Program-made: the position numbers and the translations under genes
Shown here: positions 31,154-47,371 of the stretch, in pieces
How positions within the stretch are numbered: the stretch's first letter is position 1
How the letters are laid out: each line of letters starts with the position of its first letter
Origin: Obrimoposthia wandeli
Lineage: Eukaryota
Assembly (NCBI GenBank): GCA_977020255.1
Contig: CDROCS010001028.1
Location: forward strand, 186,001-250,000
DNA: 64,000 nt
Direction of reading: 5' to 3'
Notes under the pieces: generated by a model
Seen by the model: only the letters and a program-made list of their open reading frames with translations
Told to the model about the DNA's origin: nothing
The model's database searches: none

Positions 31154-32266
31154 TTATGCGACTTTTTCTACACCTTTAACTTCTGGCTCTTCTGCCACGT
31201 TCATATTGCGTGTTACGTATACCGCGATAAATAACGCTGACACACCGCCAACCAATTTACCTAATACCACCGCTGAAATTAAGTCACTATTTACAGCAGC
31301 TGTGAAACCAAGGTGATCACCAAAAGCGAATGAAGCACACACGGCAAAAGCAACGTTGATGATTTTCCCACGGTTATCCATGTCTTTTAAGATATTAAAC
31401 ATTGCAATGCTATTCGCTAATGTTGCCACCAAACCCGCCGCTGCAGTTTCACCCATACCCATCGCACGACCAAGCTTAATCAATGGTTTATTAAAATGCT
31501 TAGTGATGAAATGAACCATCGGGAACGCACCTGCTAAAACAATCGCAATTGAACCGATAATTTCAATACCGTCAGAAATTGGCGCCATACCCGGAATAAC
31601 TACAAACCCTGTTAAGGTTTCAACCACAATGGCTGCCAGTGCTAGGGTGATTATCGCAATAACGCCTTTACCAAAGACTTCAAATCCACGGATCATCGCA
31701 TCTGGTTTTAGCCATAAACCCACAGCAATTAACCCTGCTACAATAACAATAGGTACAAGGTTTCCTAAGATCATCGCTAAATCAAACCCTGCAAATAACC
31801 CACCAACCAAACAACCTACCGGAATAGTCGTTAAGCCAATTAACACACCACGAGCAAGAAAAGGTGTATCTTCTTTATTGATAATGCCCAACGCGACAGG
31901 AATGGTAAACACAATCGTTGGCCCCATCATTGAGCCTAAAATTAGCCCTGCAAAGTTACCTGCTTCTGGTGTTTGAGCCATACTCATTGCTAACGGGTAC
32001 CCCCCCATGTCATTGGCTAATAATGTGCCCGCAAACATGGCAGGATCAGCACCCAGCGCAGTGTAAAGTGGAACAACAACAGGACTAAGTAACGTTGCAA
32101 GTACCGGAGCTAAACTCACAACCCCAACCATAGCTAATGCCAACGCGCCCATCGCCATAAAACCTTCATCAAACTTTTCGCCATACCCCCAACGATTTCC
32201 AAGCGCTTTATCCACCGCACCAAGAATCATAAAGCCGACCATAATGTATATAATAATGTCATTCAT
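31154..32266 (-). CDS. eutH: Ethanolamine permease EutH
   Basis: LANDMGGYPLA, GSMMGPTIVFTIPVALG, FAFGDHLGF. Confidence 0.93.
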   Translation of the reverse strand: MNDIIIYIMVGFMILGAVDKALGNRWGYGEKFDEGFMAMGALALAMVGVVSLAPVLATLLSPVVVPLYTALGADPAMFAGTLLANDMGGYPLAMSMAQTPEAGNFAGLILGSMMGPTIVFTIPVALGIINKEDTPFLARGVLIGLTTIPVGCLVGGLFAGFDLAMILGNLVPIVIVAGLIAVGLWLKPDAMIRGFEVFGKGVIAIITLALAAIVVETLTGFVVIPGMAPISDGIEIIGSIAIVLAGAFPMVHFITKHFNKPLIKLGRAMGMGETAAAGLVATLANSIAMFNILKDMDNRGKIINVAFAVCASFAFGDHLGFTAAVNSDLISAVVLGKLVGGVSALFIAVYVTRNMNVAEEPEVKGVEKVA

Positions 32267-32329
32267 GATATTTTTTCCCTAAAAATGATATGCAAATATT
32301 TAAAAATCAAAGTGTTAATCATTACTAAA

Positions 32330-32881
32330 CTAAATCGTACCTTGTAAAATTTCTTTCGATGGCTGTGCAATTACCACTTTATCTACCAGTACGCCTTTTC
32401 CTTTTATTCTTTCTGCTGCGGCATCAACGGCCGCTTGTACTGACGCGACATCTCCTGTTAACGTCACAAATCCTTTCCCACCAATCGCCATCGCCATGTG
32501 CACTTCTAGTAACTCCACATTAGCGGCTTTTACTGCCGCATCTGCCGCTTCTACAATGGCCGCAACAGAGAAGGTTTCAACAATGCCTAATGCCCCTGTT
32601 TTTTCTACCACTCGCGTTCCAGAAATAGCAGGAAATACATCAGGATGAACATTCGCAATAACCAGATCATCCACAACTTCACCACCACCAATTCGCAATC
32701 CAGTATCAATCGCAGCATTAACGGAAGCGACATCACCAGCCACCATAATCATGAATTTTCCGGGACAAATAGTTCGGTTAAATAAAATCTCTATATTTGC
32801 CGCTTTTAACATGGCATCAGAGACTAAAAAGCCACGAGCTATTGAATTTAATTCAATACAACCTATTGAAGTTAACATCAC
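32330..32881 (-). CDS. pduT: Tandem BMC shell protein (BMC-T), PduT-like
   Basis: IELNSIARG, RTICPGK (Fe-S ligand Cys), AIGGKG. Confidence 0.88.
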   Translation of the reverse strand: MMLTSIGCIELNSIARGFLVSDAMLKAANIEILFNRTICPGKFMIMVAGDVASVNAAIDTGLRIGGGEVVDDLVIANVHPDVFPAISGTRVVEKTGALGIVETFSVAAIVEAADAAVKAANVELLEVHMAMAIGGKGFVTLTGDVASVQAAVDAAAERIKGKGVLVDKVVIAQPSKEILQGTI

Positions 32882-32890
32882 GATCTCTTT

Positions 32891-34252
32891 CTAAATTCGT
32901 TTGATAACAATAACGTTATCCACTGAAATAACGGTGCCATCAATACTTGAATGCACAGCAACACTTAATGCATCAGGGGCTGCCTGACCAATAATTTGAC
33001 CTTTTTTTACACTGTCACCCACCTTAACTATTGCTACCGCAGGCTTACCAATATGTTGAGATAAAGGGATAGTGACTTGATTTATATCGACTGGTATTTT
33101 TGTTGACGTTTGATTTTTCAACACATCAAACTCAATGAATTCCGCTTTAATGTGGATATAATCGGTTAATTCTAAACGACGAACTAAACGCTTAGTTGGC
33201 ACACCTCGATATTCTCTTAATGGATGAACATCAATGGTTCTTTCTTGTAATTGAACCGGTGTAAGTAATTGATTATTATCTCGCAGGGTTCTTTTTGTTA
33301 TGCCGCATACTCGACTTGGATCTAACCCTTCAGGGCACGACCACATAGTACATAAGTTGCATCCACTACACGCTTGCGCTGCCAATGCATCAGGTAAGTT
33401 ATTTACACCAGAAACTTGCAACGAACGCATAGCTAAATGGGGTTGTATTGGATAACCAAGCAAGCCTCTAGGGCACATTGAGCTGCACATTCGGCATTGA
33501 TCACACGCCGCTTTACCAATGCGAAGTAAATCTTGCTCACTGCGCTGTTTAATACGGGCGACTCGGTTCGTTTTTGGTAGAACAAGCAATCCACTCGATA
33601 TTTTGGTCACAGGCTGAGACAAATCCTCAGTTACCGAACCCATCATTGGCCCACCTTCGACTACAACGAAATCATGACATGTGATTCCCCCCGCCAGATC
33701 TATCGCTTCTTGATAAGTGATACCAATTGGCAGCCAAGCTGTGTAAGGAGTAACAACTTCACCATGAACGGTAATCATGGTTTCTGTAACGGCAATATTC
33801 TTTGAGGCTCGAAACACATTGATAAACGATTCAATGTTATTCACCATCACACCAATGTCTTTTGGTAAGCCACCAGAAGGGATGCGTTTACCTGTGGCTT
33901 TATAGACTAATTCAACTTCATCCCCTGCGGGATACACATCATCCATCAAGCATAAATCAATCGTATTCGGTAATGTGGCTTCCAGTATCGCTATCGTATC
34001 GGTGTTTTTCTTTTTAATGCCAATCACACCACGGCTTGCCCCTACTTCTTTCATAGCAAGCAACATTCCGCCAAAAAGATCACTCGTCCAACGCTGCATA
34101 AGAATCTGATCTTTATATAATAAAGGCTCACACTCTGCACCATTCGCTAAGACCATATCCACCTGACAGTCTAGCTTAACGTAAGTGGGGAACCCTGCCC
34201 CACCTGCGCCAATAACACCACTGTCTTGAACCTGTTTTAACAACGGATTCAT
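32891..34252 (-). CDS. pduS: PduS-like (RnfC-like) cobalamin reductase
   Basis: GAGGAGFPT, NGAECEPLL, GGPMMG, CDQCRMCSSMCP, CSGCNLC..SCP, PLSQHIG. Confidence 0.88.
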   Translation of the reverse strand: MNPLLKQVQDSGVIGAGGAGFPTYVKLDCQVDMVLANGAECEPLLYKDQILMQRWTSDLFGGMLLAMKEVGASRGVIGIKKKNTDTIAILEATLPNTIDLCLMDDVYPAGDEVELVYKATGKRIPSGGLPKDIGVMVNNIESFINVFRASKNIAVTETMITVHGEVVTPYTAWLPIGITYQEAIDLAGGITCHDFVVVEGGPMMGSVTEDLSQPVTKISSGLLVLPKTNRVARIKQRSEQDLLRIGKAACDQCRMCSSMCPRGLLGYPIQPHLAMRSLQVSGVNNLPDALAAQACSGCNLCTMWSCPEGLDPSRVCGITKRTLRDNNQLLTPVQLQERTIDVHPLREYRGVPTKRLVRRLELTDYIHIKAEFIEFDVLKNQTSTKIPVDINQVTIPLSQHIGKPAVAIVKVGDSVKKGQIIGQAAPDALSVAVHSSIDGTVISVDNVIVIKRI

Positions 34253-34267
34253 CGACCACTCCTAAAA

Positions 34268-34924
34268 TCAGTTTGCAATAGGGTTGCGAGCAACATCAAT
34301 CACCGCGGCTTCAAATGCGTCACAAGCAGCTCGACACGCGGCCTGTGAACCCGTTAAATGACCACCACCAAAGTTTGTTTCTGATGGGGGAGCAAATAAA
34401 TTCACCAAAGTAACATCGGCCGCTTTTAGGGCTGCGTCTAACCCAACCATTGCTTCAAGTGGCGGAGCAATTAAATACGCTAGGGCTTCCCCTGTTTCTA
34501 CCCCTGCTTCTTGAGATAAAAACGTGCCAGTTGACGACACTAAGTGTGCAAAATAGGCAATATCTCCCGCTTCATTTGCACACTGAAAACCCGCTTCAAA
34601 TTCAATGTATGACTTAACTCTTTCAAGCCCTGCAATTACATCCGCAGGATTGGTCGCAGCAATAATACCGATAACCTCACCAGATGTTGGGCCTGAAGAA
34701 TGAGCAGCACCTGCATAGAAAGATTTGGCATAAACCACATCCACATTTGCTGCTTTAGTGGCTTCATCTAACGCACAATAAGTCACATCATCGCAATCGG
34801 CCGTAATTAAACCAATGCTGTTATGATGATCTTTCAGGCCTAATTTTTCTTTATAAACGGCGTCAACAGAAGCGATCACTCGTGTTGCTAAAACTGATGG
34901 TTGGATCTTGTCATAAATAGCCAT
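34268..34924 (-). CDS. eutL: BMC-T shell protein EutL
   Basis: ALDEATK.ANVDVVYAKSFYAG, PPSETNFGGG.LTGSQAAC. Confidence 0.95.
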   Translation of the reverse strand: MAIYDKIQPSVLATRVIASVDAVYKEKLGLKDHHNSIGLITADCDDVTYCALDEATKAANVDVVYAKSFYAGAAHSSGPTSGEVIGIIAATNPADVIAGLERVKSYIEFEAGFQCANEAGDIAYFAHLVSSTGTFLSQEAGVETGEALAYLIAPPLEAMVGLDAALKAADVTLVNLFAPPSETNFGGGHLTGSQAACRAACDAFEAAVIDVARNPIAN

Positions 34925-34937
34925 AGTTACTCTCCTG

Positions 34938-35834
34938 TTAACGCTTTAAATTAATGCCACTGGCTTGTTTAGCGATCATCTCTTTTACTAAATCAACGAT
35001 CACAGCAGCAGCTTCTACTGGTGGAGTGCCTCCTGCGTGAATATTCGAGATAACCGTACGATCCGATTCAACGGTATTTTCTGTTGGGTTATAAATGGCG
35101 TAACAACTTAATGATTCAGATTGGCCTAATCCCGGACGCTCACCAATCAATAGAACATTGACTTGTGCATTCAATAACATGCCAATTTCATCTTGCGCTT
35201 TTACTCGTCCATAGCGTAAGAAGAAAGGCGTACCCACATCTAACCCGGCATTTTTAAGACCGTTTAATAACGCAGGTAAAATTTCACCGTGGTTGCTTGT
35301 AACAGCATCCAAACTCAAACCGTCAGATAACACGACTTGCACTTGAGGTGCTTGCTTGCATTGATCTTTAAGTATCGTTTTTGCTTCATCATTTAACTTA
35401 CGTCCTAAATCAGGACGTGTTAAATATTGGTCTTTATCAATGGCACACGTTTGCACTTCAATTAAATTTCGTTCTTGTAACCAAGTAGATTCCACATTTT
35501 TAATTACGGTATCTTTAGAGCGAGAGTGATCGGCTAAGAAACGCAATAACGCCACAGTACGAGGACGAGGGCCAGCACGGCCAGTACCCATACGTGCATT
35601 GGTTTGACTCATTAAGTCATCGACAATTTTTGGGTCGGCTGCATTTTTAACGCCGTTCCATTTTTTAAAGCGCAGCTCACCAAGATCGGGTAAAGAATCA
35701 TCCCCGATTGGAGATTGGTTAATGGCATTAACGGAATCATCAACAATTTTTGTGATGGTTGATGGCTGAATATTGGTTTCACCAAGTTGGGCTAATACCG
35801 TCGCGACAATGCTTTGAATATTTTGATCGTTCAT
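34938..35834 (-). CDS. eutC: Ethanolamine ammonia-lyase small subunit
   Basis: [27 protein letters not shown]; N-terminal encapsulation peptide. Confidence 0.96.
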
Positions 35835-35844
35835 TACCTATTCC

Positions 35845-37209
35845 TTACTTAAAGAAAATTGACGGATCGCCTGCTTTTGGTGTTAGGCGTCCATTTTCCA
35901 TTAATCCCATTGTTTCCATCCACGCTTCAAATTCTGGAGCAGGACGTAAATTCAATAATTGGCGAGCGGTCGCTGTGTCATGAAATGCCGTTGTTTGGTA
36001 ATTCAACATAATGTCATCACCCATAGGCATACCAATCACAAAATTCACACCTGACGCTGCCAGTAATACCAATAAGTTTTCATTCGAGTTTTGATCAGTA
36101 TCGGCATGGTTGGTGTAACACGCATCACAGCCCATTGGCATTCCTGATAACTTGCCCATGAAGTGGTCTTCTAAACCAGCACGAATGATCTGTTGATGGT
36201 TATACAAATACTCAGGCCCAATAAAGCCGACTACTGTGTTAACCAAATGCGGATTGTAACGTTGAGCAAGGGCATAACAACGCGCTTCCATGGTCATTTG
36301 ATCGGCACCATTATGAGCATTAGCAGATAAGGCAGAACCTTGACCTGTTTCAAAGTACATCATATTTTCGCCTGCCAAATTGCTGTATTGCTTACCAATT
36401 TCATAAGCTTCATCCAGCATCTCGACACTCACACCAAATTCATTTAACCCTTTCTCTGATCCCGCAATACTTTGGAATAGCAGACCCGCAGGAGCGCCTT
36501 TACGAACGGCTTCCATTTGAGTTGTAATATGCGCTAATACACAAGGTTGAGTTGGTATATCAAACTTGGTGATCACTTCTTGAATGGAATTCAGCATTTG
36601 CGTGGTGTTCTCAACACTGTCTGTTACAGGGTTAATTCCTATCACCGCATCACCACAACCAAACGAAAGGCCTTCATACGTTTGCGCTAAAATAGAGCTT
36701 ACGTTATCGCGCGTGTCATTTGGTTGAAGGCGACAACTAAAACGTCCAGGAAGGCCAACGGTTGCATTCGCTTTCGTCACTACCGTTAGTTTTTTACCGC
36801 CATACATCAGGTCACTGTTTGAACTTAATTTTGCCGCTGCCGACACCATTTCAGCCGTCAGGCCTTTGCGTAAACGTTGATAATCTTCTCTGGTTGGTTC
36901 ATCAGACAATACGTATTCACGCAGCTCACTGACGGTCCAGTTTTTAATACTTTCAAATACCGAACGATTCAAACTGTCTTGGTTAATGCGCGTAATAATG
37001 TCCGACTCATAACTTACAACTGGGTTTTCACGCAGATCATTCAACGTCATTTCAGACAACACGTGTTTTGCAGCAATTCGTTCTTGAGACGTCTTGGCAG
37101 CAATCCCTGCTAATACATCACCAGAGCGCAGTTCCGATGCTTTTGCTAATACATCTTTTACGTCTCTAAATTGATAGCTTTGACCAAACAGGCTCGTTTT
37201 CAATTTCAT
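35845..37209 (-). CDS. eutB: Ethanolamine ammonia-lyase large subunit
   Basis: LRSGDVLAG, RLQPNDTRD, YFETGQGSALS, EDHFMGKL. Confidence 0.98.
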   Translation of the reverse strand: MKLKTSLFGQSYQFRDVKDVLAKASELRSGDVLAGIAAKTSQERIAAKHVLSEMTLNDLRENPVVSYESDIITRINQDSLNRSVFESIKNWTVSELREYVLSDEPTREDYQRLRKGLTAEMVSAAAKLSSNSDLMYGGKKLTVVTKANATVGLPGRFSCRLQPNDTRDNVSSILAQTYEGLSFGCGDAVIGINPVTDSVENTTQMLNSIQEVITKFDIPTQPCVLAHITTQMEAVRKGAPAGLLFQSIAGSEKGLNEFGVSVEMLDEAYEIGKQYSNLAGENMMYFETGQGSALSANAHNGADQMTMEARCYALAQRYNPHLVNTVVGFIGPEYLYNHQQIIRAGLEDHFMGKLSGMPMGCDACYTNHADTDQNSNENLLVLLAASGVNFVIGMPMGDDIMLNYQTTAFHDTATARQLLNLRPAPEFEAWMETMGLMENGRLTPKAGDPSIFFK

Positions 37210-37223
37210 AAAATACTTCCTAA

Positions 37224-38654
37224 TTAAGATGGAAAGGCAAGAGATTTAACGGTTAACGGTACAATCTCTCCACCGAAATAACTTTTCCCAATATCGATGT
37301 AGTCCCCTTCATGAGTCGCTACTTCGTCAATAACACTTAATGCATTTGTGGCCAATAACGGCTGCAGTTCCATGCCTAACGCCTTACCTATGTCGTTATG
37401 CAGAACCACTAAAAACATGACATGATGGTTACCATGCTTCTCATAAAATAACGCTAATTCACGAGCAAGATGCTGAACTGCTTTATAAGTGATGGGCATC
37501 GATTCATCAAAAGAGATAGCGTAATGATCATTTGATAACCCTAAATCCATTCGCTCCGCGGCAAGCACAATTTCACTGCAGATATCAGGAGAATCTTGCA
37601 GCCAATCTACCGATGGATGAACCACTGGAATATTCTTTAAAGGCAGTTCTTCTGCGTTTAACCAAATCGTCGAGCCCGATAACGTTAATGAATACGCACC
37701 AGCCCCAATAACCGTTGCTCTCACGGTTTGATTAGGCTTTTTAACAACAAATTTATCTAGTTCTTGATGGCGTAATAATGCTCTTGCCAGTAAAGGACCA
37801 ACATCACCAAATTGCATGGTGTTTTGCTCGCCTTGTTGTTGCGAATAAAAACACTCACCCACACCACCACTGATAAAGATGGCATCAATATCGGCAATGT
37901 CTTTTAGCTCTGGTGTTTGTAATAAACGAGCGGCTAATCCTGTTAACTTTCCGGTAAGGAGTTCAACAATGAGATCCGCCATTCGAGCCACAATACGTAC
38001 TAAATAATCATGGTTGATTTGTCTTGGATTTAACGCTTCACTAAACAATTCATTAATTACGGTAATGGCAGGTTTATGTAAGTAACTCACTTCTCCCTGA
38101 GCATTGAGTTCAACTAAGCGTCCACCAATATTCAAGCACGCGGTATCAACCACTTTTCCACTATTAAAAACCACGTAATTTGACGTACCACCACCAATAT
38201 CAATGTTGATAACTTTGGCGTGGTTCTTTTCTGAATATTCTTGTGCGCCACTCCCACGGCCCGCAATAATAGATTCTAAATTCGGCCCTGCCGTAGCCAC
38301 CACAAAATCACCCAATTGATGGGATAGGTCCATAATGGCATCGCGCGCATTATGGGCTTTGGCTGTTTCACCGGTAATAATAATGGCACCGGTCTCTACG
38401 CCTTGTTGTTCAAACCCTGCCAAGGCAATTTGTTGATCAATAAACTGGCGCAATGCCACCACATCAATGACACCATCATGGGCAATTGGCGTAAACTCAA
38501 CAGGGCTTTGATAGCTGATTTCGCGGTCAATAAATTCATACATCGGCACCTGAGAAGCGGGCGCTCGGTTAACGACCGTCAACGTAGAAAATATAACTTG
38601 TGTAGTGGTGGTACCAATGTCTATCCCAACACTGTGTATGATTTTTCTTTCCAT
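37224..38654 (-). CDS. eutA: EAL reactivase EutA
   Basis: SVGIDIGTTTTQ, IITGE, DIGGGTSN, GDYIDIG. Confidence 0.96.
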   Translation of the reverse strand: MERKIIHSVGIDIGTTTTQVIFSTLTVVNRAPASQVPMYEFIDREISYQSPVEFTPIAHDGVIDVVALRQFIDQQIALAGFEQQGVETGAIIITGETAKAHNARDAIMDLSHQLGDFVVATAGPNLESIIAGRGSGAQEYSEKNHAKVINIDIGGGTSNYVVFNSGKVVDTACLNIGGRLVELNAQGEVSYLHKPAITVINELFSEALNPRQINHDYLVRIVARMADLIVELLTGKLTGLAARLLQTPELKDIADIDAIFISGGVGECFYSQQQGEQNTMQFGDVGPLLARALLRHQELDKFVVKKPNQTVRATVIGAGAYSLTLSGSTIWLNAEELPLKNIPVVHPSVDWLQDSPDICSEIVLAAERMDLGLSNDHYAISFDESMPITYKAVQHLARELALFYEKHGNHHVMFLVVLHNDIGKALGMELQPLLATNALSVIDEVATHEGDYIDIGKSYFGGEIVPLTVKSLAFPS

Positions 38655-39898
38655 CAGCAGCCTTCCATTCTCAATTCGCCAGCGAGCGCTTGTTCAAGTA
38701 AGGTGACAATTTGCTTTGCATTCACTTGGCGAGGCGTGCCTGTTAAACAAATGTCAGACATGGCTTGTTCTGCTATCGCTGTAAAATCATGTGGGGTGAT
38801 ATCAAAGCCAGCTAACGAGGTAGGTAAACCCAAATCATCAATCAATTGTCTGACTCTCAAAATGGCGGCCTGACAGAGTTCTCTCTGTGTCATTGAGTCA
38901 CGATCAACACCCAATGCTTTGGCTATTTCTGCATAACCACTTTCACAACATAAGCGATTGAATACCATCACATAAGGCAATAAAATCGCGTTGGCTACAC
39001 CATGAGGAATGTGATAAAACGCCCCCACTTGGTGAGAAATGGCGTGCACTAATCCTAAGCCAGAGTTACTGAACGACAACCCTGCTTTATAAGCGGCAAT
39101 CGCCATGCTGTGACGCATATCCATATCATCACCACAACCAACAGCGATGGGTAATGCTTTGATCACCATTTCTATCGAGTGATACGCGTAAGCCTGAGCC
39201 AACGGATTTGATTGACGTGAGGTGTACGCTTCAATCGCATGCGTCAACGTATCTATCCCTGTTGCAGCAGTAATCGCAGAAGGCACACCAAGCATTAAAG
39301 CAGGATCAAGCAGCGCCAAATCAGGCACTAACGCTGGCCCTTTAATCGGCACTTTAATGCTATTTACCACATCTTTAATCACCGTAATGTCGGTGGCTTC
39401 AGAGCCGGTTCCTGCGGTAGTTGGGATCGCCCCTAATCCAACATTACGTGAGGCTAACCCGCCCACTTTAAATTCAGACAGTGCTCCCTTATAGTCACCC
39501 AGCACCGCAATCGCTTTGGCGGTATCTAATGCCGAGCCACCACCTAAACCTAATACAAAATCGGCACCGCTTTCCGTCAGTATCGCCACGCCTTTTGCCA
39601 CTAATTCACTGTCAGGCTCACCTTGAACATCCGTGAATAGCGTGAACGTTAACCCTGCTAATTCAATGGCGGTTTGGCAACTTGCCGTTAAGCCTAATTG
39701 CCATACCATTTTATCTACCACCAATAAAATGTGCTTTGCACCAAGCTCATGAAGTGCAGATCCTAATTGATTCACACAATACGGCCCTGTCACCGTAATC
39801 GCAGGGGAGCGAAACGTGAAACTGGTGTTAAACTGACATTGCTGCAAGGTTTGAGTCACGATTGTTGCAATGGTGGAAGGTGAAATAGTGTTTGCCAT
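38654..39898 (-). CDS. eutG: Iron-containing alcohol dehydrogenase EutG
   Basis: GGGSALD, PTTAGTGSE, GIDTLTHAIEA, HAISH, HGVAN. Confidence 0.88.
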   Translation of the reverse strand: MANTISPSTIATIVTQTLQQCQFNTSFTFRSPAITVTGPYCVNQLGSALHELGAKHILLVVDKMVWQLGLTASCQTAIELAGLTFTLFTDVQGEPDSELVAKGVAILTESGADFVLGLGGGSALDTAKAIAVLGDYKGALSEFKVGGLASRNVGLGAIPTTAGTGSEATDITVIKDVVNSIKVPIKGPALVPDLALLDPALMLGVPSAITAATGIDTLTHAIEAYTSRQSNPLAQAYAYHSIEMVIKALPIAVGCGDDMDMRHSMAIAAYKAGLSFSNSGLGLVHAISHQVGAFYHIPHGVANAILLPYVMVFNRLCCESGYAEIAKALGVDRDSMTQRELCQAAILRVRQLIDDLGLPTSLAGFDITPHDFTAIAEQAMSDICLTGTPRQVNAKQIVTLLEQALAGELRMEGC

Positions 39899-39901
39899 AA
39901 T

Positions 39902-40741
39902 TTACTCTTCTTCTTGCAATGCAAGCCCGTAGCTCGCAATCGCTAAAGGGGTTAAATATAACGCGCGAGACAGTTCTATGATTTCAATCGTTGGGAAGGT
40001 TTGTTTAAAAATATCAGAGAAGCCTTTAATTAACGTGCCACCACCCGTTAGGTAAATCGCCTCAGGTTGGTGACCTGAAATATGCCCAGCAACAATATCG
40101 GACATTTTTTCAATTACTGGTTTTGCCATTGCTGCAATCATAGGATCGTCGTGACTGCGGCGTTTACACAATTCTGCCTCTTGCATATCAATACCTAGAC
40201 CACCAGCAATGGTTAAGCTGACATGACGTCCTCCTGATGGCTCATCCAAAGAAAGCTGTAACTCACCGTTTTCAATGATCGCAGTACCTGTTGTACCTCC
40301 ACCCACATCAACAACTGCACCGTTAGTTATGTGCAACAATGCCGCCACACTGCAAGGTTCATCAATCACATGATTTACCTTGACTCCAGCCGATTCCACG
40401 ACGTTAATCGAGATCCTAGGATCTGTACCCGGTGGGTATGAGGTGATCACTTCCTTAGGTTCAATACCTAATTTTTCTTGTACTTTATTCAACTGGCTAC
40501 GCACAATTCTGCATGCGCCTGCGTAATCCACAACAACGCCATCTCTTACGACATCAGCCCAATCAAGAAACGCTGCGATAGGCGTTCCTTGATCATTTAT
40601 GACGACGGTTTGGATGTCTGCTGTTCCTAAATCGACCCCAATAAAGACATTTTCTGGACTGTTAAATGGCGTTTCATCATTTACAATCTCATCAATAATC
40701 AATAGGTTTTCATTAGCTTTCGCAAGATAATCCGTCTTCAT
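39902..40741 (-). CDS. eutJ: EutJ (Hsp70/actin-like ATPase)
   Basis: GVDLGTA, VVRDG.VVDY, DVGGGTTG. Confidence 0.93.
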   Translation of the reverse strand: MKTDYLAKANENLLIIDEIVNDETPFNSPENVFIGVDLGTADIQTVVINDQGTPIAAFLDWADVVRDGVVVDYAGACRIVRSQLNKVQEKLGIEPKEVITSYPPGTDPRISINVVESAGVKVNHVIDEPCSVAALLHITNGAVVDVGGGTTGTAIIENGELQLSLDEPSGGRHVSLTIAGGLGIDMQEAELCKRRSHDDPMIAAMAKPVIEKMSDIVAGHISGHQPEAIYLTGGGTLIKGFSDIFKQTFPTIEIIELSRALYLTPLAIASYGLALQEEE

Positions 40742-40744
40742 GGC

Positions 40745-42163
40745 TTATACGATCCTAAATGAATTTACAGCCGTACAACGACGCTTACGAGTAAAGGTTA
40801 ATGCGTTTGTCACGCCTTCCCCTGTTGGGGTTGAAATGGTCATGGTTGTCCACCCTTCACCACCCGCGCCAATCGCTGCTATAGAAGGGCCATTTTTCGC
40901 CAACAAACTGCAATCCATCTCATACGCCATGCGTGTTAACACATCGATATTTTTAGAATGAATCGCCGCGGTATGACGATTGTTATTCTCTAATTCAACA
41001 GCCCAATCAATGGCTTGATCTGCATTAGCTGCTCGAATAAGCGGTAAAATTGGCATCATCTGCTCTGTTACGGCAAATACATGAGATTTGTCCGCTTCAA
41101 AGATCAGCAAACGCGTCGCTTCAGGCACATCAATACCTGCGGCTGCGGCTAATTTAGCAGCATCACGACCAACCCATTTAGGGTTTGCTGATGGCTTGTC
41201 ACCCGGATAGCCCTTCAAGACAATTCGTGCAATGGCTTCTGCTTCATCTAACGTTAATAAATGCGCTCCATTTCGGCACATTGCGGCTTTTAACTCATCC
41301 GCAATAGCGTCAACCGCGATGATTTCTTTTTCTGTTGCACACACAATATTATTGTCAAAAGAAGCACCTTGAACGATAGAAACTGCCGCACGTTCAATGT
41401 CTGCCGTTTCATCAACGACAACTGGCGGATTACCAGGCCCTGCTGCAATTAATCGTTTATCCGTAATTTTTCGTGCGGCTTCAACCACTGCATCACCACC
41501 TGTCACAACCAATAGATTAATGCCAGGGTAAACAAATAAGGCTTCTGCATTTTCTAACGATGGGGTGGCTACCGTTGTGCAAATCGCATTTGGTCCACCC
41601 ACACTCTCACATGCTTTATTCACTAATTGAATTGCATACTGAGAGACTTTCTTTGCTGCAGGGTGAGGGGCAAATACGACGGCGTTGCCGCCAGCAATCA
41701 TACTGATCGCATTGTTAATAACAGTACAGCTTGGATTTGTACTTGGGGTAACTGACGCGATAACGCCCCAAGGTGCATTTTCCATTAAGCTCATACCCAT
41801 ATCACCAGAAGCGGCTTGCGGTGATAATATTTCCGTTCCCGGCGTACGCTGAGAAACCAAAATATGTTTTTTAATTTTGTCTTCAACACGACCAAAACCC
41901 GTTTCTTCGACCGCCATTTCTGACAGTTCTTGAGCGTGTTTTTTCGCCATACGACGAATTGCCGTGATCATCTGATCACGTAAGGCCACACTGCGAATTT
42001 GTTTCTGTGCTTTTTTGGCTGCTGCAACCGCACCATCTAAGGTTGGGAATACACCATAATTTCCTATTTCAGGATTGACTTGCTGATCCAAAGGAGTGTG
42101 AGTATTACCATTCAGCTGTAATACAATCTGCTTTACGATTTCTTCAATTTGTTTTGGATCCAT
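40745..42163 (-). CDS. eutE: CoA-acylating acetaldehyde dehydrogenase EutE
   Basis: PSTNP, AGPGNPP, FDNNIVCATEK, TPTGEG; N-terminal encapsulation peptide. Confidence 0.95.
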   Translation of the reverse strand: MDPKQIEEIVKQIVLQLNGNTHTPLDQQVNPEIGNYGVFPTLDGAVAAAKKAQKQIRSVALRDQMITAIRRMAKKHAQELSEMAVEETGFGRVEDKIKKHILVSQRTPGTEILSPQAASGDMGMSLMENAPWGVIASVTPSTNPSCTVINNAISMIAGGNAVVFAPHPAAKKVSQYAIQLVNKACESVGGPNAICTTVATPSLENAEALFVYPGINLLVVTGGDAVVEAARKITDKRLIAAGPGNPPVVVDETADIERAAVSIVQGASFDNNIVCATEKEIIAVDAIADELKAAMCRNGAHLLTLDEAEAIARIVLKGYPGDKPSANPKWVGRDAAKLAAAAGIDVPEATRLLIFEADKSHVFAVTEQMMPILPLIRAANADQAIDWAVELENNNRHTAAIHSKNIDVLTRMAYEMDCSLLAKNGPSIAAIGAGGEGWTTMTISTPTGEGVTNALTFTRKRRCTAVNSFRIV

Positions 42164-42193
42164 GTTCAATATACTCCACCACATCGACAGCGA

Positions 42194-42487
42194 TCATTTG
42201 CCGTAGCAACGCTCGCCGCCTGCAGTAACTTCATCAATAATACCAACAACACAAAGATCAACAGGAGAGCCATCAATAGAGCCAGAATAAGCGGTTCTTG
42301 CAGAGCTACCAGAAACCACCATTACCCATTCCCCTTCACCAGCACCAAGCTGATCCATGGCAATGTGAACTTCACCAGTGGCTTTCCCTTTTGGGTTTAC
42401 AAACTCAACCAAACACAATTTATCCATTTGCATGTTTCGACTGCGAACGGTTGCAATCACATGACCGATAACACGAGCTATTCTCAT
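42194..42487 (-). CDS. eutN: BMC vertex pentamer EutN/CcmL
   Basis: MRIARVIG, D..GAGEGEWV, PVD..VVGIID. Confidence 0.95.
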   Translation of the reverse strand: MRIARVIGHVIATVRSRNMQMDKLCLVEFVNPKGKATGEVHIAMDQLGAGEGEWVMVVSGSSARTAYSGSIDGSPVDLCVVGIIDEVTAGGERCYGK

Positions 42488-42543
42488 GACATCTCCTTGC
42501 TAAAGGTTTCCCCTAGATCCACCATGAACCTAAGGGGGAGCCG

Positions 42544-42825
42544 TTATTTTGATTTAGAAGTAATTGGAAATACTTTCTCTAAGTCTTTTGATGGACGTGG
42601 AATAACGTGTACTGCCACTAATTCACCTAAACGTTGAGCAACCACAGAGCCTGCATCTGTCGCAGCTTTACATGAAGCAACATCACCACGGATAAGCGCA
42701 ACAACATAACCTGAACCAATTTGTTGATAACCAACTAACTCAACACGAGCGGCTTTTACCATTGCATCAGACGCTTCAATCAACGCCGTTAAACCTTTAG
42801 TTTCTAAAATACCTAACGCATCCAT
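42544..42825 (-). CDS. eutM: BMC-H shell hexamer EutM (copy 2)
   Basis: [25 protein letters not shown]. Confidence 0.93.
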
Positions 42826-42848
42826 TTTTCTACCCTTCTATAAATAAG

Positions 42849-43178
42849 TTATTTTGAATTACGAGCCGATTTAGCGGCCGTTGCTTCTTTTTCTGGCGCA
42901 CTTTCTTCTAACTTAATAGGGAAAATGGCTTCTAAGTCACTGTGTGGACGAGGGATAACATGCACTGCTACCACTTCGCCTAAACGTTGTGCAGCCGCTG
43001 CTCCTGCATCTGTTGCCGCTTTACAGGCCGCAACATCACCACGAACAATGGCAGACACAATGCCTGAACCAATTTGCTTATAGCCAACTAACTCAACGCG
43101 TGCGGCTTTCACCATCGCATCAGATGCTTCAATAAGAGCAGTAAGGCCTTTTGTTTCAATAATACCCAGAGCTTCCAT
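42849..43178 (-). CDS. eutM: BMC-H shell hexamer EutM-like with C-terminal extension (copy 1)
   Basis: [11 protein letters not shown]...VIPRPH plus an [19 protein letters not shown] tail. Confidence 0.88.
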
Positions 43179-43217
43179 TTTATTTCCTTTAAATATCAGT
43201 CAGTTAAATTTATTAAA

Positions 43218-44189
43218 TCAGAGGTTAGAAGCCAATAGTGAGATGTCAACGATATCGTCAGCGCTGCACCCTCTTGATAAATCATGCACCGAACCAGCTA
43301 ACCCCTGTAACATTGGGCCCAACGCAATGTAGCCACCTAAACGCTGTGCCACCTTGTAAGCAATGTTGCCTGCATTGAGAGACGGAAAGATAAAGACGTT
43401 AGCCGTCCCTTCCAGTTGGCTACCGGGCATTTTTTGTGACGCAATCGCCGGAACAATCGCTGCATCAAATTGGATCTCACCATCAATGATCAAATCAGGC
43501 GCTCGCTCACGTACCATATTGGTGGCGTCAATAACATGGTTAATGGTTGAGTGATGTGCACTGCCTTTGGTTGAAAAAGACAGCATGGCGACACGAGGCT
43601 CAACCCCCGTTAAACGCTGGTAATTACGTGCTGTATCAATCGCAATGTCTGCCAACTGTTCTGCTGTTGGTAATGGAATGACCCCTGCGTCTGAAAAAGC
43701 AAATGTGTTTTGCCCATCAGGCGATAGCATCATAAAAAAACTTGATACCGTATTACTTTTCTCCGCAATTCCGACACCACGTAATGACGCTCGGATCACG
43801 TCCCCTGTCGACGATTGATTGCCCGCAATACAGATATCCGCATAACCTTGGTCAACCATCATCATTGCAAAATTGAGCGGCAGTTTAAGTAACTCAATCG
43901 CGACATCACGCGCCATTGGTTTACGCTGCTTGGCAATATAGCGCGTTACCATTTCATCAAAACAACCCGAAAACTCAGGCGACAACACGGTTAAACAAGG
44001 CATAGCAACGCCACTGTTATGGGCGTAATCTCGTAATAAGTGTGGGCTTCCTAATAAAATAGGCTCAGCAAGACCGGCTTGTTTTAAATCGTTCGCAGCA
44101 TGCAACAAACGAATGTCGTTCGAATCTGGAAAAACAATGCGTTTAGGTTGCTTTAAGCAAGATTCTCGGCACTTATCAAGTAACTTCAT
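43218..44189 (-). CDS. eutD: Phosphate acetyltransferase EutD
   Basis: [31 protein letters not shown]. Confidence 0.93.
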
Positions 44190-45033
44190 TTGATAAACCT
44201 TTCAGCAATAATTCATGCCCATTAAGATGTTGCCACACGAGAATCATGACAACATACACCGCACTAGACAGGCGATTTAACCCCGCAACAAGATCGTCGC
44301 GATTAACCCCATCACTGGTTAATTGCATGCTTGGATCAAGAAACGTATCAATTGCTGTTAACTCTAATTCACGTACTAATGCACGTAAATAGTTCAACTC
44401 TGCGACTAACTTTCCATAACTCACATCAGGCAACATATGATCATGCCCAAGGTACTTTAATGGGTTGTGCGACCAGTGATGAATAACAGAGGCATCAAAC
44501 TCACCCAGATAAAGCTCTGGCAATGGCTGACTTGTGACTTCAGATTGCAAAATTTGACCTAAATAAGATCGAATATCAGCCATAAAGCACGTTAAGATCT
44601 CTGGTTGTTGCTCCATCTCACATTGAACGATCACACAATAGCTAATGCAGGCGTCTAATTTTCCTCGTAATACAATACGAGGGTGTGTTTTTGGCACTAG
44701 AATTTTGTCATCAAGGTGCGTCATTAAAGACGGCTTTTCACCCACATTGGAATGACACAAAACGCAGCTGTTTTCAGGTCGAATGTTGTTGCTTTTTAGT
44801 GGATGAACTTTCTCAAATTCAGAGCTATCAGCACCTGACACTCCTTTCTCGACAAAGACTTGCCCTTTCTCATCACGCCAACGCACTGATATTTTTCTTT
44901 CAATCAACATTTGCTGAGCGGCAGGGGTGAAACGCGTTCCTGGTTCTAGTTGAATCTCACCATTTTGTCGCATACCAAAATACTGCTTCAAATAATCTTC
45001 AGTAATAAACTTAGGTATACTTTGCGTGTTCAT
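44176..45033 (-). CDS. eutT: Cob(I)alamin adenosyltransferase EutT
   Basis: [42 protein letters not shown]. Confidence 0.92.
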
Positions 45034-45035
45034 AG

Positions 45036-45737
45036 TTACAACCACTCAACAGGGTAAGTAATGTAAACGTAACGAACATGAGTTGGCGTACCGAATTCAA
45101 CAGTGCTGTTTTTAGGGATAAAGATAACTTCGCCTGGCTTTGCAATGGTCGTTCCAGACGCAGTTTTTACGTGAAGCTCGCCTTCAAGTACCACATTGAC
45201 TTCATCGTAAGTTAACGTCCATGGGAAGAATGCATTTTCCCATCCCATATAACCTACGCCCATGTTGCTGCCTTCTTTCGCTCCAATAACATCGGTTAAT
45301 CCAATGTTTTTTCCTGGTGCCCCATCAAACACATCTAACTTCACCGCATTACCGTGAATAAGCACGATGCCATCATCGTTAATTTGACGAGGAGACGCTG
45401 GTAGATTTTGATTAAAATCAGCCATTGCTGCTGCAATTAACTTTTGGATTTCAGCACTTTTTGCAGCATCAACACCTGATAATTTCGCTTCAATTTCAGC
45501 TTGAATTAACTGGCTTTGACCAACCTCAGGGGCAGATTCTACGGCAACAAGTTCAGGTACTTCAGGCGCAACCACTGGCGCAGAAATTGGGGCTGTATCT
45601 AATAACTCAATGCCTTCAACTTTTGCTACTTCACGTGCTTCTGGAGTAATAATAAATTCTTTTACGGGTGCAACAAGGTAGGTCTTTTTATCTGACTTTG
45701 CTTGTCGAATATCCGCAGCAGAAATTAGCTGTTTCAT
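45036..45737 (-). CDS. eutQ: EutQ cupin-domain protein
   Basis: IITPEAREVA, FPWTLTYDE, GEVIFIPK. Confidence 0.93.
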   Translation of the reverse strand: MKQLISAADIRQAKSDKKTYLVAPVKEFIITPEAREVAKVEGIELLDTAPISAPVVAPEVPELVAVESAPEVGQSQLIQAEIEAKLSGVDAAKSAEIQKLIAAAMADFNQNLPASPRQINDDGIVLIHGNAVKLDVFDGAPGKNIGLTDVIGAKEGSNMGVGYMGWENAFFPWTLTYDEVNVVLEGELHVKTASGTTIAKPGEVIFIPKNSTVEFGTPTHVRYVYITYPVEWL

Positions 45738-45782
45738 AACGTCACTTCCTTATCCGTTTTCACAACACCACCCCAGTAAAAA

Positions 45783-46238
45783 TTACTGCAATGATAATAA
45801 ATAGTGAGAAAGTTTATCTATCGAATCTTGGTCAAAAATAGAAACTTCAAAATAAGGTTCTGGAATTCTATTTTGTCTAAATAATTTTTTGGCATGTTCA
45901 ATATCAGCATCGATTTCATCGACCTTGCTAATAACACCTATAATATTTTTATTAGGATAAACATTGAGCAATCCATTTGGTGGTGCAAATCTTTTCCCAC
46001 TTGCAGGCTGTAACAATACAACCGACTTAACATTACAAATTGTTGTTAATAACGCGCCACTTAACGAACGTTTATCAATGAACTCTCCTGGAGTATCAAT
46101 AACCTTTCCTGGGTAAAATATAGGGGATTGTGTTTTACCTGTATTTGTTTCTATATTAACTAATTTGTCAACTAGGGCAGATTTTCCTGCATCTACCTCT
46201 CCAACAAAAACAACATTATCTAATTTTTGTTTTTCCAT
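45783..46238 (-). CDS. eutP: EutP/PduV P-loop protein
   Basis: GEVDAGKS, IDTPGEF, SKVD. Confidence 0.9.
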   Translation of the reverse strand: MEKQKLDNVVFVGEVDAGKSALVDKLVNIETNTGKTQSPIFYPGKVIDTPGEFIDKRSLSGALLTTICNVKSVVLLQPASGKRFAPPNGLLNVYPNKNIIGVISKVDEIDADIEHAKKLFRQNRIPEPYFEVSIFDQDSIDKLSHYLLSLQ

Positions 46239-46239
46239 A

Positions 46240-46590
46240 TTATGTTCTTGTTATTTGGCAACCATTGTAAGATAGCGTTCTATTTAATACATCACAGACA
46301 GTCTTTAATGCTTCATCTACTGCCGCAACAGAACCTGTGATCACTAACGCACCAGAAAACCGATCAAGGAATCCAATATGGACATCCGCTGATTTTGTTG
46401 CAATGTCACCAGCAATTATTGATGTTTCTCCAGGGGTTAGCGTCAATATCCCAATTGCACCGCTGCTCTCTACGCCAACTCTTTCACATAATTCTTCGGT
46501 TGGATTCGCAATTAAGTGGGCAAGAGTCACCTGCTTACCAGGTACAAACTCTTGGATAATTCTTTCTTTCCCTGACGTTAAATCTAGCAT
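46240..46590 (-). CDS. eutS: Permuted BMC shell protein EutS
   Basis: [29 protein letters not shown]. Confidence 0.95.
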
Positions 46591-46815
46591 ATAAGAAATA
46601 TATATAATTTGAATTTGTAGCGAATCTACTCCTAAAGTCTTAGCTAATCAACATGGTAAATTTCATTATTACTAACATTATTTATTACTTATGAGCATTA
46701 TCACAAATAATAAATAATTTATTTTTTAAATCAATTTTAATATGTAGATGTTAATGTAAAAATAAATTTTTTCAATTAACATCCTGTCATACACTCCCTT
46801 TTTTGGGAGGCCATT

Positions 46816-46895
46816 ATGCATATTGACCACTTTAAAGAACACTTTAGAGCATCACTGACCAGTACTAAGGTGACCCATTTCCTTTTTGAAATATT
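46816..46895 (+). mobile_element. ISAs1-family transposase 5' remnant
   Basis: GGGAGG RBS plus MHIDHFKEHF...KVTHFLFEI, resembling an ISAs1 N-terminus, then degenerating. Confidence 0.45.
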
Positions 46896-47308: not shown

Positions 47309-47371
47309 GTAGAATTGAATTCATTGCAAAATGGCTAATATAAGTTTATTGGACAGGACGAAAAAAGAGGT

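What the first reader, a model, noticed from the sequence alone, without database searches (positions are those of the whole stretch)
31154..46590. Hybrid ethanolamine microcompartment: enteric EUT core with PduS/PduT replacing eutK/eutR
Seen: order S-P-Q-T-D-M-M-N-E-J-G-A-B-C-L-pduS-pduT-H. Known: the Salmonella order is S-P-Q-T-D-M-N-E-J-G-H-A-B-C-L-K-R; PduS (cobalamin reductase) and Fe-S PduT belong to pdu-type and some other BMC loci. Inferred: a self-contained B12 recycling loop (EutA, PduS, EutT) with a shell electron conduit, in a marine-type host where long eut loci are uncommon.
Basis: partly seen in the sequence, partly recalled or inferred. Interest (0 to 1): 0.72.

Follow-up and report, generated by a model that had tools for sequence, protein, structure and literature searches.

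The report
Marine EUT1 operon with PduS/PduT
The 18-gene operon for breaking down ethanolamine inside a protein-shelled compartment is really there, with two iron-sulfur genes (pduS, pduT) and without the gut-bacterial eutK and eutR. The same layout is common in marine Photobacterium, Shewanella and their kin and was already catalogued and described, so it is an ordinary member of a known kind.

Summary
Observation confirmed. A minus-strand operon (46590 to 31154) reads eutS-P-Q-T-D-M-M-N-E-J-G-A-B-C-L-pduS-pduT-eutH, with no eutK or eutR.

- The same order occurs in at least 26 other species genomes: 14 Photobacterium, Aliivibrio, Shewanella, Psychromonas, Ferrimonas and unnamed Vibrionaceae.
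- Sutter 2021 types such loci as EUT1, with their PduT in its own clade.
- Axen 2014 Text S1 describes EUT1 loci with a PduS homolog, and Marinobacter's as lacking eutR.
- Morganella's published operon is eut...LK-pduST-eutR.

It is not a recent hybrid. The EUT1-linked PduS forms a strongly supported clade, only 38-42% identical to PduS of true PDU or glycyl-radical loci. PduS and PduT distances track EutB distances (r about 0.85). Both genes are under strong purifying selection, and all iron-sulfur cysteines are invariant.

A complete internal B12 cycle (EutA, PduS, EutT) is plausible but untested. The missing regulator is the one open point. The scan's earlier notes on this finding cover this same stretch only, not other DNA.

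The parts
46240..46590 (-). eutS, permuted BMC-H shell protein
   Evidence: NF012012 at 2.7e-49, above cut-off. 70% identical to E. coli EutS.
45783..46238 (-). eutP, EutP/PduV-family small GTPase-like protein (acetate kinase by NCBI's name)
   Evidence: PF10662 at 3.8e-23. TIGR02528 at 1.5e-27, below the equivalog cut-off. 37% identical to E. coli EutP.
45036..45737 (-). eutQ, cupin-type acetate kinase
   Evidence: NF012001 at 1.3e-62, above cut-off.
44176..45045 (-). eutT, EutT-type ATP:cob(I)alamin adenosyltransferase
   Evidence: NF011595 at 2.9e-70, above cut-off. H81, C94 and C97 are invariant in alignment A2. The first Cys of the E. coli CC pair is Ser here, and Ser, Ala or Gly in the marine relatives.
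43218..44189 (-). eutD, pta-type phosphotransacetylase, the EUT1 hallmark
   Evidence: PF01515 at 2e-103. NF007233 at 1.9e-107. 52% identical to E. coli EutD.
42849..43178 (-). eutM copy 1, BMC-H, 109 aa with a charged C-terminal tail
   Evidence: NF012018 at 2e-48. Both copies are kept in all related loci.
42544..42825 (-). eutM copy 2, BMC-H, 93 aa
   Evidence: NF012018 at 9.1e-44. 73% identical to E. coli EutM. The two copies are 75% alike at the DNA level (D1).
42194..42487 (-). eutN, BMC-P vertex protein
   Evidence: NF011992 at 8e-30.
40745..42184 (-). eutE, acylating acetaldehyde dehydrogenase with an N-terminal encapsulation-peptide-like helix
   Evidence: NF011927 at 2.3e-192. The N-terminus from Met8 (MDPKQIEEIVKQIV) parallels the E. 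coli EutE N-terminus.
39902..40741 (-). eutJ, actin-fold chaperone-like protein
   Evidence: NF011660 at 1.1e-90.
38654..39898 (-). eutG, iron-containing alcohol dehydrogenase
   Evidence: Fe-ADH family. The EutG model scores 1.5e-91, below its equivalog cut-off. 41% identical to E. coli EutG and in the same operon position.
37224..38654 (-). eutA, ethanolamine ammonia-lyase reactivase
   Evidence: NF007993 at 5.1e-170. 52% identical to E. coli EutA.
35845..37209 (-). [quoted passage not shown]
   Evidence: NF011649 at 1.7e-194. 70% identical to E. coli EutB.
34938..35834 (-). eutC, lyase small subunit with an N-terminal encapsulation peptide
   Evidence: NF003971 at 4.5e-93, matching from residue 57. 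The N-terminus [17 protein letters not shown] parallels that of E. coli EutC.
34268..34924 (-). eutL, BMC-T (permuted tandem) shell protein
   Evidence: TIGR04502 at 4.8e-105, above cut-off.
32891..34252 (-). pduS homolog, an NADH/FMN flavoprotein with two 4Fe-4S clusters and a C-terminal RnfC_N domain
   Evidence: PF01512, PF10531, PF13534 and PF13375. GAGGAG at residues 15-20. Cysteines 250, 253, 256, 260, 295, 298, 301 and 306 are invariant in 45 of 45 homologs. dN/dS is 0.056 against the closest relative.
32330..32881 (-). pduT homolog, tandem BMC-T shell protein with a pore cysteine for a 4Fe-4S cluster
   Evidence: Two PF00936 domains. E 4e-51 to PduT structure 3n79 and 7e-51 to 3pac, with the TICPGKF motif aligned. 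The Cys is invariant in 45 of 45. dN/dS is 0.023.
31154..32266 (-). eutH, ethanolamine transporter, here the last gene of the operon
   Evidence: NF011666 at 3.3e-173, above cut-off. In ten related loci an eat-sized permease gene (472-478 aa) fills this slot; three of them were confirmed as eat, TIGR00908.
46591..47371 (-). AT-rich non-coding leader and promoter region upstream of eutS
   Evidence: No ORF of 70 aa or more. GC is 0.35. No Rfam family matches.
46690..46705 (-). CRP-like site TGTGATAATGCTCATA, about 100 nt upstream of the eutS ATG
   Evidence: Read. The same motif sits at the same distance in Aliivibrio EL58 and P. nomapromontoriensis. Function is inferred only.
29444..29499 (+). 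Left copy of a 56-nt direct repeat that brackets aphA plus the eut operon; it holds a strong terminator hairpin
   Evidence: 89% identical to the copy at 47372-47427. The terminator lies at 29475-29453 on the minus strand.
47372..47427 (+). Right copy of the 56-nt direct repeat, just 3' of a lysR C-terminal fragment
   Evidence: The lysR fragment lies at 47656-47904.

Best explanation
This is a complete EUT1-type ethanolamine-utilisation microcompartment operon. It belongs to the PduS/PduT-bearing, eutR-less variant found in marine Gammaproteobacteria, here on a Photobacterium/Aliivibrio-like contig of a multi-organism assembly.

Shown here:
- Gene content and order.
- Intact domains and cofactor ligands.
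- Purifying selection on pduS and pduT.
- Co-inheritance of pduS-pduT with the eut core.
- Wide occurrence of the same layout.

Inferred from the characterised Salmonella Eut and Pdu systems:
- EutH imports ethanolamine.
- Inside a shell of EutS, two EutM, EutN, EutL and PduT, the AdoCbl-dependent lyase EutBC makes acetaldehyde and ammonia.
- EutE makes acetyl-CoA and NADH. EutG regenerates NAD+. EutD recycles CoA to give acetyl-phosphate. EutQ and EutP yield ATP.
- EutA ejects damaged cobalamin from EutBC.
- The PduS homolog, a flavoprotein with two 4Fe-4S clusters, reduces that cobalamin with NADH so that EutT can re-adenosylate it.
- PduT, with a 4Fe-4S cluster at its trimer pore, docks PduS and may pass electrons through the shell.

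Control is unknown. No EutR or EutVW is encoded in the locus. A conserved CRP-like site suggests catabolite control.
For: Gene families and order. Identity of 37-73% to the E. coli Eut proteins, with a pta-type EutD.

The same order was confirmed in 24 fetched loci plus two more from the order sample.

PduS tree: the EUT1-linked PduS, with one nested locus type, form a clade with 100% support on a long branch. They lie apart from PduS of PDU loci (identified by PduG and PduO) and of glycyl-radical loci.

Co-inheritance: Mantel r is 0.85 for PduS and 0.86 for PduT against EutB, with 0 of 2000 permutations as high. That equals the values for EutL and EutE.

Constraint: the eight cluster cysteines of PduS and the pore Cys of PduT are invariant in 45 of 45 homologs. 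dN/dS is 0.056 and 0.023. The EutT ligands H81, C94 and C97 are conserved.

Literature: EUT1 typing of Shewanella KT99, Photobacterium, Marinobacter, Oleispira and Paraglaciecola loci, with their PduT in clade Ts_warmBlue. EUT1 with a PduS homolog, and Marinobacter without eutR. Morganella eut...K-pduST-eutR.

Environmental data: near-identical DNA occurs in runs of at least 14 studies. Contigs from marine-sediment RNA libraries lie on eutH, pduT, pduS, eutL, eutC and eutB.
Against: - No biochemical or genetic data exist for any EUT1-linked PduS or PduT. A corrin-reductase role is carried over from Salmonella PduS, which by the PDU-locus homologs examined here is only about 40% identical.
- PduS/PduT pairs also sit in B12-independent glycyl-radical loci, so B12 reduction cannot be their only role.
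- The PduT scores below the cut-off of NCBIfam TIGR02526 (128.7 against 250.3 bits).
- No regulator was found.
- The RNA-library contigs do not prove transcription, as the tool itself cautions.
Confidence: 0.82

Rival explanations
1. PduS and PduT act mainly as a redox conduit. Electrons from lumen NADH pass through the PduS flavin and clusters and the PduT pore cluster to the cytosol, or the reverse. This balances NAD+/NADH alongside EutG, and cobalamin reduction is not their main job.
For: PduS/PduT pairs occur in loci with no B12 enzyme: the glycyl-radical loci L048, L049, L051, L055, L056 and L058. The literature proposes electron transfer across the shell for such pairs. The pore Cys is invariant.
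Against: This locus already has EutG for NAD+ recycling. It also has the two other B12-recycling parts, EutA and EutT, and only the reductase step would otherwise be missing. The two roles do not exclude each other.
Confidence: 0.3
2. One reading: a recent hybrid in which a PduS/PduT cassette from a pdu-type locus replaced eutK and eutR in an enteric-type operon.
For: pduS-pduT sit where E. coli has eutK-eutR. The locus lies at different chromosomal sites in different species and is bracketed by a 56-nt repeat here, so it moves.
Against: - PduS of true PDU loci in the same family is only 38-41% identical and lies across a long branch.
- EUT1-linked PduS and PduT co-diverge with EutB over 25 loci.
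- Morganella has eutK, pduST and eutR together.
- The variant occurs in several families.
Confidence: 0.03
3. pduS and pduT are decaying passengers with no role in the Eut compartment.
For: PduS evolves faster than the eut core: mean pairwise distance 0.28 against 0.11 for EutB.
Against: The reading frames are intact in all loci. dN/dS is 0.056 and 0.023. All cluster cysteines are invariant.
Confidence: 0.03

Closest known systems
EUT1 locus of Marinobacter aquaeolei VT8, with the other marine EUT1 loci of the Sutter 2021 catalogue (Shewanella benthica KT99, Photobacterium spp., Oleispira, Paraglaciecola, Sedimenticola)
   Same: An EUT1 core with a PduS homolog and a PduT-type BMC-T. Marinobacter has no eutR. 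The conserved enteric neighbours such as maeB are absent. Shewanella benthica KT99 and several named Photobacterium species have exactly this gene order.
   Different: Nothing of substance. This copy is 87-98% identical in protein to that of P. nomapromontoriensis. Axen 2014 says the Marinobacter locus keeps all Salmonella eut genes, which would include eutK. I did not inspect that locus.
Morganella morganii KT operon eutSPQTDMNEJGHABCLK-pduST-eutR (PMC3521468)
   Same: pduS-pduT lie in the same order, right after the eutL end of an EUT1 operon.
   Different: Morganella keeps eutK and eutR, has one eutM, and has eutH between eutG and eutA. Whether its PduS belongs to the same clade was not tested here.
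Canonical Salmonella/E. coli EUT1 operon (eutSPQTDMNEJGHABCLKR)
   Same: Fifteen orthologous genes in the same relative order, apart from eutH. pta-type EutD, EutT-type adenosyltransferase, and N-terminal encapsulation peptides on EutC and EutE.
   Different: The window lacks eutK and eutR, has two eutM copies, has eutH at the 3' end, carries pduS-pduT, and has no maeB, hemF or yfeX neighbours.
Salmonella/Citrobacter PduS and PduT of the propanediol (PDU1) compartment
   Same: The same domain architecture and cluster ligands. PduT matches structures 3n79 and 3pac at about 1e-51 with the pore Cys aligned.
   Different: A different clade. PduS of PDU loci in related genomes is 38-42% identical. 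The partner adenosyltransferase would be EutT, not PduO.
EUT2B/EUT2D loci, mostly Firmicutes, which also encode PduS (Axen 2014)
   Same: Ethanolamine compartments with a PduS oxidoreductase.
   Different: EUT2 loci use a PduL-type phosphotransacylase and mostly the EutV/W two-component regulators. This locus has a pta-type EutD and neither regulator.

Membership tests
EUT1 BMC locus type (Axen 2014; Sutter 2021) | Signature enzymes EutB and EutC plus the reactivase EutA | tested here: met
   NF011649 at 1.7e-194, NF003971 at 4.5e-93, EutA models at 5e-170.
EUT1 BMC locus type (Axen 2014; Sutter 2021) | pta-like phosphotransacetylase EutD (PF01515) instead of the PduL-type PF06130 | tested here: met
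   PF01515 at 2e-103. The criterion is quoted.
EUT1 BMC locus type (Axen 2014; Sutter 2021) | EutG alcohol dehydrogenase and EutE aldehyde dehydrogenase with an N-terminal encapsulation peptide | tested here: met
   The N-terminal helices compare with those of E. coli.
EUT1 BMC locus type (Axen 2014; Sutter 2021) | EutR (AraC-type) regulator in the locus | tested here: not met
   E. coli EutR finds nothing in the window or in the 20-kb loci of relatives. There is no close EutR in four carrier genomes. Axen's Text S1 accepts an EUT1 locus without eutR, that of Marinobacter, so this trait is usual but not required.
EUT1 BMC locus type (Axen 2014; Sutter 2021) | Conserved neighbours maeB, hemF and yfeX (present in 90% of EUT1 loci) | tested here: not met
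   The flanks here are aphA plus a nan-type operon on one side, and a lysR fragment plus a PTS island on the other. The published outliers lack these neighbours too.
EUT1 BMC locus type (Axen 2014; Sutter 2021) | The published catalogue types loci of identical architecture as EUT1 | tested here: met
   S. benthica KT99, P. marinum AK15, P. lutimaris JCM 13586 and P. lipolyticum DSM 16190 are labelled EUT1 in the shell-protein trees. Their loci L018, L009, L011 and L004 have this order.
PduS (cobalamin reductase family; catalogue model HMMPduS_1) | Complex1_51K + SLBB + RnfC_N domains with two 4Fe-4S motifs | tested here: met
   PF01512, PF10531, PF13375 and PF13534. CxxCxxCxxxC at residue 250 and CxxCxxCxxxxC at residue 295.
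PduS (cobalamin reductase family; catalogue model HMMPduS_1) | Reduces cob(III)alamin and cob(II)alamin and supports an adenosyltransferase | not testable with these tools
   Needs an enzyme assay. Only the Salmonella and Citrobacter PduS proteins have been characterised (papers cited).
PduT-type BMC-T (single trimer with Fe-S pore) | Tandem BMC domains and a pore cysteine that ligates a 4Fe-4S cluster, next to a PduS gene | tested here: met
   Two PF00936 domains. Cys39 in TICPGKF aligns with the pore position of 3pac and 3n79. It is invariant in 45 of 45 homologs. The gene is adjacent to pduS.
NCBIfam TIGR02526 eut_PduT equivalog | Score above the curated cut-off of 250.3 bits | tested here: not met
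   128.7 bits. The protein belongs to the family broadly but not to that equivalog.
EutT metal-containing adenosyltransferase (enteric class) | The HX11CCX2C metal-binding motif | tested here: inconclusive
   His, the second Cys and the last Cys are invariant. The first Cys of the CC pair is Ser, Ala or Gly in all five marine sequences. Whether three ligands suffice was not tested.

The most novel reading that the evidence does not exclude
The most novel reading still open has three linked parts.
1. pduS-pduT is the ancestral state of EUT1. The textbook Salmonella/E. coli operon would then be a reduced derivative that lost its internal cobalamin reductase.
2. In the marine clade the compartment runs a fully internal B12 repair cycle, EutA to PduS to EutT.
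3. That clade is induced by an as yet unknown, non-EutR and non-EutVW mechanism.
Probability: 0.3. Interest if true: 0.45.

Novelty: already known. Interest (0 to 1): 0.15.

Why it matters
As a discovery it matters little. It adds one more copy of a catalogued EUT1 variant.

Its use is as a pointer to two small gaps:
- No EUT1-linked PduS/PduT pair has been tested. Such a test could settle which enzyme reduces cobalamin for EutT inside Eut compartments, a step that to my knowledge has no dedicated enzyme in the Salmonella model.
- These marine operons have no recognisable ethanolamine or B12 regulator.

Near-identical copies occur in seawater, sediment, cold-seep, food and invertebrate-gut data sets. 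Ethanolamine use through this compartment is therefore probably a routine trait of this marine lineage.

Tried and rejected
- **Riboswitch or known RNA upstream of eutS:** Rfam found nothing in the whole window.
- **Regulator next to the locus:** upstream neighbours in five relatives are unrelated genes: a VF530 DNA-binding protein, a CYTH protein, an M24 peptidase, MetH and an IS1595-like fragment.
- **EutR elsewhere:** EutR-like genes exist only beside a separate short eutBC locus in Psychromonas arctica (L037) and on another contig of this assembly, C5197, with no eutB within the 10 kb fetched. They cannot be tied to this operon.
- **Tandem 23-nt motif at 47236-47311:** absent from all related loci, so it is probably not an eut operator.
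- **Morganella-type pduST for a joint tree:** the class sample (0 of 400) and the order sample (no enteric EUT1 with PduS) did not supply one.
- **Careful tree search:** it did not finish in time, so the quick IQ-TREE result is reported.
- **dN/dS against more distant relatives:** failed because synonymous sites are saturated.
- **B12 synthesis in the host:** cannot be assigned, because the assembly holds 10 CbiC genes on 10 contigs and so is multi-organism.
- **Tsoy 2009 comparative eut paper:** not held in the library.
- **The big protein searches and structure prediction:** not used, because no protein here was left open.

Full report
**What is there**

ORF listing shows 18 co-directional, tightly packed genes on the minus strand from 46590 down to 31154. 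NCBIfam and Pfam assign them as follows:
- eutS, eutP (EutP/PduV family), eutQ, eutT
- a pta-type eutD (PF01515)
- two eutM copies, eutN, eutE, eutJ
- an Fe-alcohol dehydrogenase in the eutG position
- eutA, eutB, eutC, eutL
- a PduS homolog (Complex1_51K + SLBB + 4Fe-4S dicluster + RnfC_N)
- a tandem-BMC PduT homolog
- eutH

I fetched an annotated E. coli eut operon as a reference. Against it the proteins are 37-73% identical, for example EutB 70% and EutM 73%. E. coli EutR finds nothing in the window, and EutK matches only through its BMC domain.

**State of the parts**

- PduS has the N-terminal GAGGAG motif and two cluster motifs. Its eight cluster cysteines are invariant in all 45 PduS homologs I collected.
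- PduT aligns over its whole length with the Salmonella and Citrobacter PduT crystal structures (E about 1e-51). Its Cys39, in TICPGKF, sits at the pore position and is invariant in 45 of 45.
- EutT keeps the His and two of the three cysteines of the E. coli HX11CCX2C motif. The first Cys is Ser, Ala or Gly throughout the marine clade.
- EutC and EutE carry N-terminal helices like the E. coli encapsulation peptides.
- Against the closest relative, dN/dS is 0.056 for pduS and 0.023 for pduT. That is in the range of eutB, eutL and eutE (0.009-0.035), although synonymous sites are near saturation.

Both genes are therefore functional, constrained parts of the operon.

**How common the layout is**

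A scan of one genome per species with the PduS protein returned 25 loci. In 19 of them the order eutD-M-M-N-E-J-G-A-B-C-L-pduS-pduT is the same. These are 14 named Photobacterium species, Aliivibrio sp. EL58, two Shewanella (including S. benthica KT99), two Psychromonas and Ferrimonas. The upstream eutS-P-Q-T part was confirmed in five of them.

Sampling at three taxonomic levels gave these figures:
- **Vibrionaceae, 401 species genomes:** 17 carry a PduS at least 67% identical, and six more carry one at 60-62%. The one 67% locus and four of the 60-62% loci that I fetched are all this same EUT1 layout. This comes to about 6%.
- **Order level, 401 genomes:** four carriers.
- **Random Gammaproteobacteria, 400 genomes:** none.

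The last gene varies. It is eutH here, and in ten related loci an eat-sized permease gene takes its place, three of them confirmed as eat (TIGR00908).

The flanking genes differ between species, even between the closest relatives. In this window a 56-nt direct repeat (89% identical) brackets aphA plus the operon. The locus therefore moves as a unit.

**Not a recent hybrid**

Nested among them are those of one other locus type, which holds an aldehyde dehydrogenase, two alcohol dehydrogenases and an acetate kinase.

PduS from genuine PDU loci in the same family is only 38-42% identical and lies elsewhere. Those loci were identified by PduG reactivase and PduO. The same holds for PduS from loci carrying an approximately 845-aa ORF that I take to be a glycyl-radical enzyme; this ORF was not checked by a family scan.

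Across 25 loci, pairwise distances of PduS and PduT correlate with those of EutB (r = 0.85 and 0.86, with 0 of 2000 permutations as high). That is as strong as for EutL and EutE. The pair has been inherited together with the eut core for the whole history of this clade.

**What is already published**

- The Sutter et al. 2021 catalogue labels the loci of Shewanella KT99, several Photobacterium strains, Marinobacter, Sedimenticola, Paraglaciecola and Oleispira as EUT1. It places their PduT proteins in a named clade, Ts_warmBlue. Its text does not discuss the pair in EUT1.
- Axen et al. 2014, Text S1, states that the EUT1 loci of Marinobacter aquaeolei and Morganella morganii hold all Salmonella eut genes plus a PduS homolog. 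It adds that they lack the neighbours conserved in other EUT1 loci, and that Marinobacter lacks eutR.
- The Morganella genome paper of 2012 gives the operon as eutSPQTDMNEJGHABCLK-pduST-eutR. This shows that pduST and eutK/eutR can coexist.
- A 2012 paper already reported a long eut operon in Photobacterium profundum 3TCK. It worked by PSI-BLAST only and did not notice PduS/PduT.

**Likely mechanism**

By homology with the Salmonella Eut and Pdu systems, this is established knowledge carried over, not something shown here. The operon should build a compartment in which:
- EutBC, EutE, EutG and EutD process ethanolamine.
- EutA removes inactivated cobalamin from EutBC.
- The PduS homolog reduces that cobalamin with NADH.
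- EutT re-adenosylates it.
- PduT provides the Fe-S pore and the docking site for PduS.

The main rival is that PduS and PduT chiefly move electrons across the shell. It gains weight because such pairs also occur in B12-independent loci. The two roles may coexist.

**Regulation**

This is the one real gap:
- No EutR or two-component genes lie in or beside the locus in any relative.
- No riboswitch was detected.
- The only conserved upstream element I found is a CRP-like site about 100 nt before eutS. It is shared with the two closest relatives.

**Context**

The 'genome' is a 1.35-Gb, 6912-contig assembly with many bacterial contigs. It holds ten CbiC genes on ten contigs and further BMC loci on contigs C5170 and C5383. 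B12 synthesis therefore cannot be assigned to this organism.

Among five carrier genomes, three have CbiC and all five have a CobA/BtuR adenosyltransferase.

Near-identical DNA of the eutH-to-eutB stretch occurs in runs from at least 14 studies: seawater, sediment, cold seep, food and invertebrate gut. Short contigs from marine-sediment RNA libraries lie on eutH, pduT, pduS, eutL, eutC and eutB, most at 95-100% identity. One spans the pduT-eutH junction. This is suggestive of expression but is not proof.

**Verdict**

This is a real, intact and well-conserved operon. It is correctly read by the first stage, but it is an ordinary member of an already catalogued and described EUT1 variant.

Noticed in passing
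window 29444-29499 and 47372-47427: A 56-nt direct repeat (89% identical) brackets aphA plus the whole eut operon. The left copy contains the strong terminator after aphA. The right copy lies just 3' of a lysR C-terminal fragment. The eut locus sits at unrelated chromosomal sites in relatives, so this may mark an insertion or recombination joint. No integrase was seen.
   Followed up: partly
window 47236-47258 and 47289-47311: Two copies of a 23-nt motif (AGTGTGATGTGACRCTATTTRTA, with an inner inverted repeat AGTGT..ACACT) lie 53 nt apart, about 650-720 nt upstream of eutS. The motif is absent from all 70 fetched loci. Its purpose is unknown.
   Followed up: partly
window 46620-46640: A conserved block CTTTAGGAGTAGATT lies about 40 nt before the eutS ATG, which is too far for a normal ribosome-binding site. 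It is shared in recognisable form with Aliivibrio, P. nomapromontoriensis and P. profundum. It could be a leader element or could point to a different start codon.
   Followed up: no
L019, L020, L040, L045, L046, L047 (Vibrionaceae and an unnamed bacterium): A different BMC locus type holds an aldehyde dehydrogenase, two Fe-alcohol dehydrogenases, an acetate/propionate kinase (L045), an EutS-like protein and, in L040, a flavin reductase-like gene. Its PduS/PduT pair nests inside the EUT1-linked clade at 55-63% identity. No signature enzyme was recognised.
   Followed up: partly
window 44176-45045 (eutT); alignment A2: The marine EutT proteins have only one Cys where E. coli EutT has the CC pair of its HX11CCX2C metal motif. 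The His and the other two Cys residues are invariant.
   Followed up: partly
L004, L005, L016, L017, L021, L041-L044, L060: In these EUT1 + PduS/PduT loci the 3' transporter slot holds an eat-sized permease gene (472-478 aa) instead of eutH. Those of L004, L016 and L044 were confirmed as eat (TIGR00908).
   Followed up: yes
G000 contigs C5170 (about 1200-2950) and C5383 (about 1000-15000): The same assembly holds at least two further BMC shell-gene clusters on other contigs, one with a PduT-like and an EutS-like gene. G000 is 1.35 Gb in 6912 contigs with ten CbiC genes, so it is a multi-organism assembly.
   Followed up: no
L037 (Psychromonas arctica, G005:C13): This carrier also has a separate short eutBC locus with a divergent EutR-like AraC regulator, 31-33% identical to E. 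coli EutR. It thus holds a long and a short ethanolamine system in one genome.
   Followed up: partly
window 47656-47904: An 82-aa ORF is a C-terminal fragment of a LysR-type regulator, most like YafC. A full-length gene of the same kind lies at 55662-56585, beyond a PTS sugar island.
   Followed up: no
window 38654-39898 (eutG): EutG has an N-terminal extension (MANTISPSTIATIVTQTLQQ) that resembles the encapsulation peptides of EutC and EutE more than the E. coli EutG N-terminus does.
   Followed up: no
L036 (Shewanella benthica KT99, G004:C122): A CbiC hit lies about 15 kb upstream of the eut operon on the same contig. An IS1595-like transposase fragment sits directly upstream of eutS.
   Followed up: no
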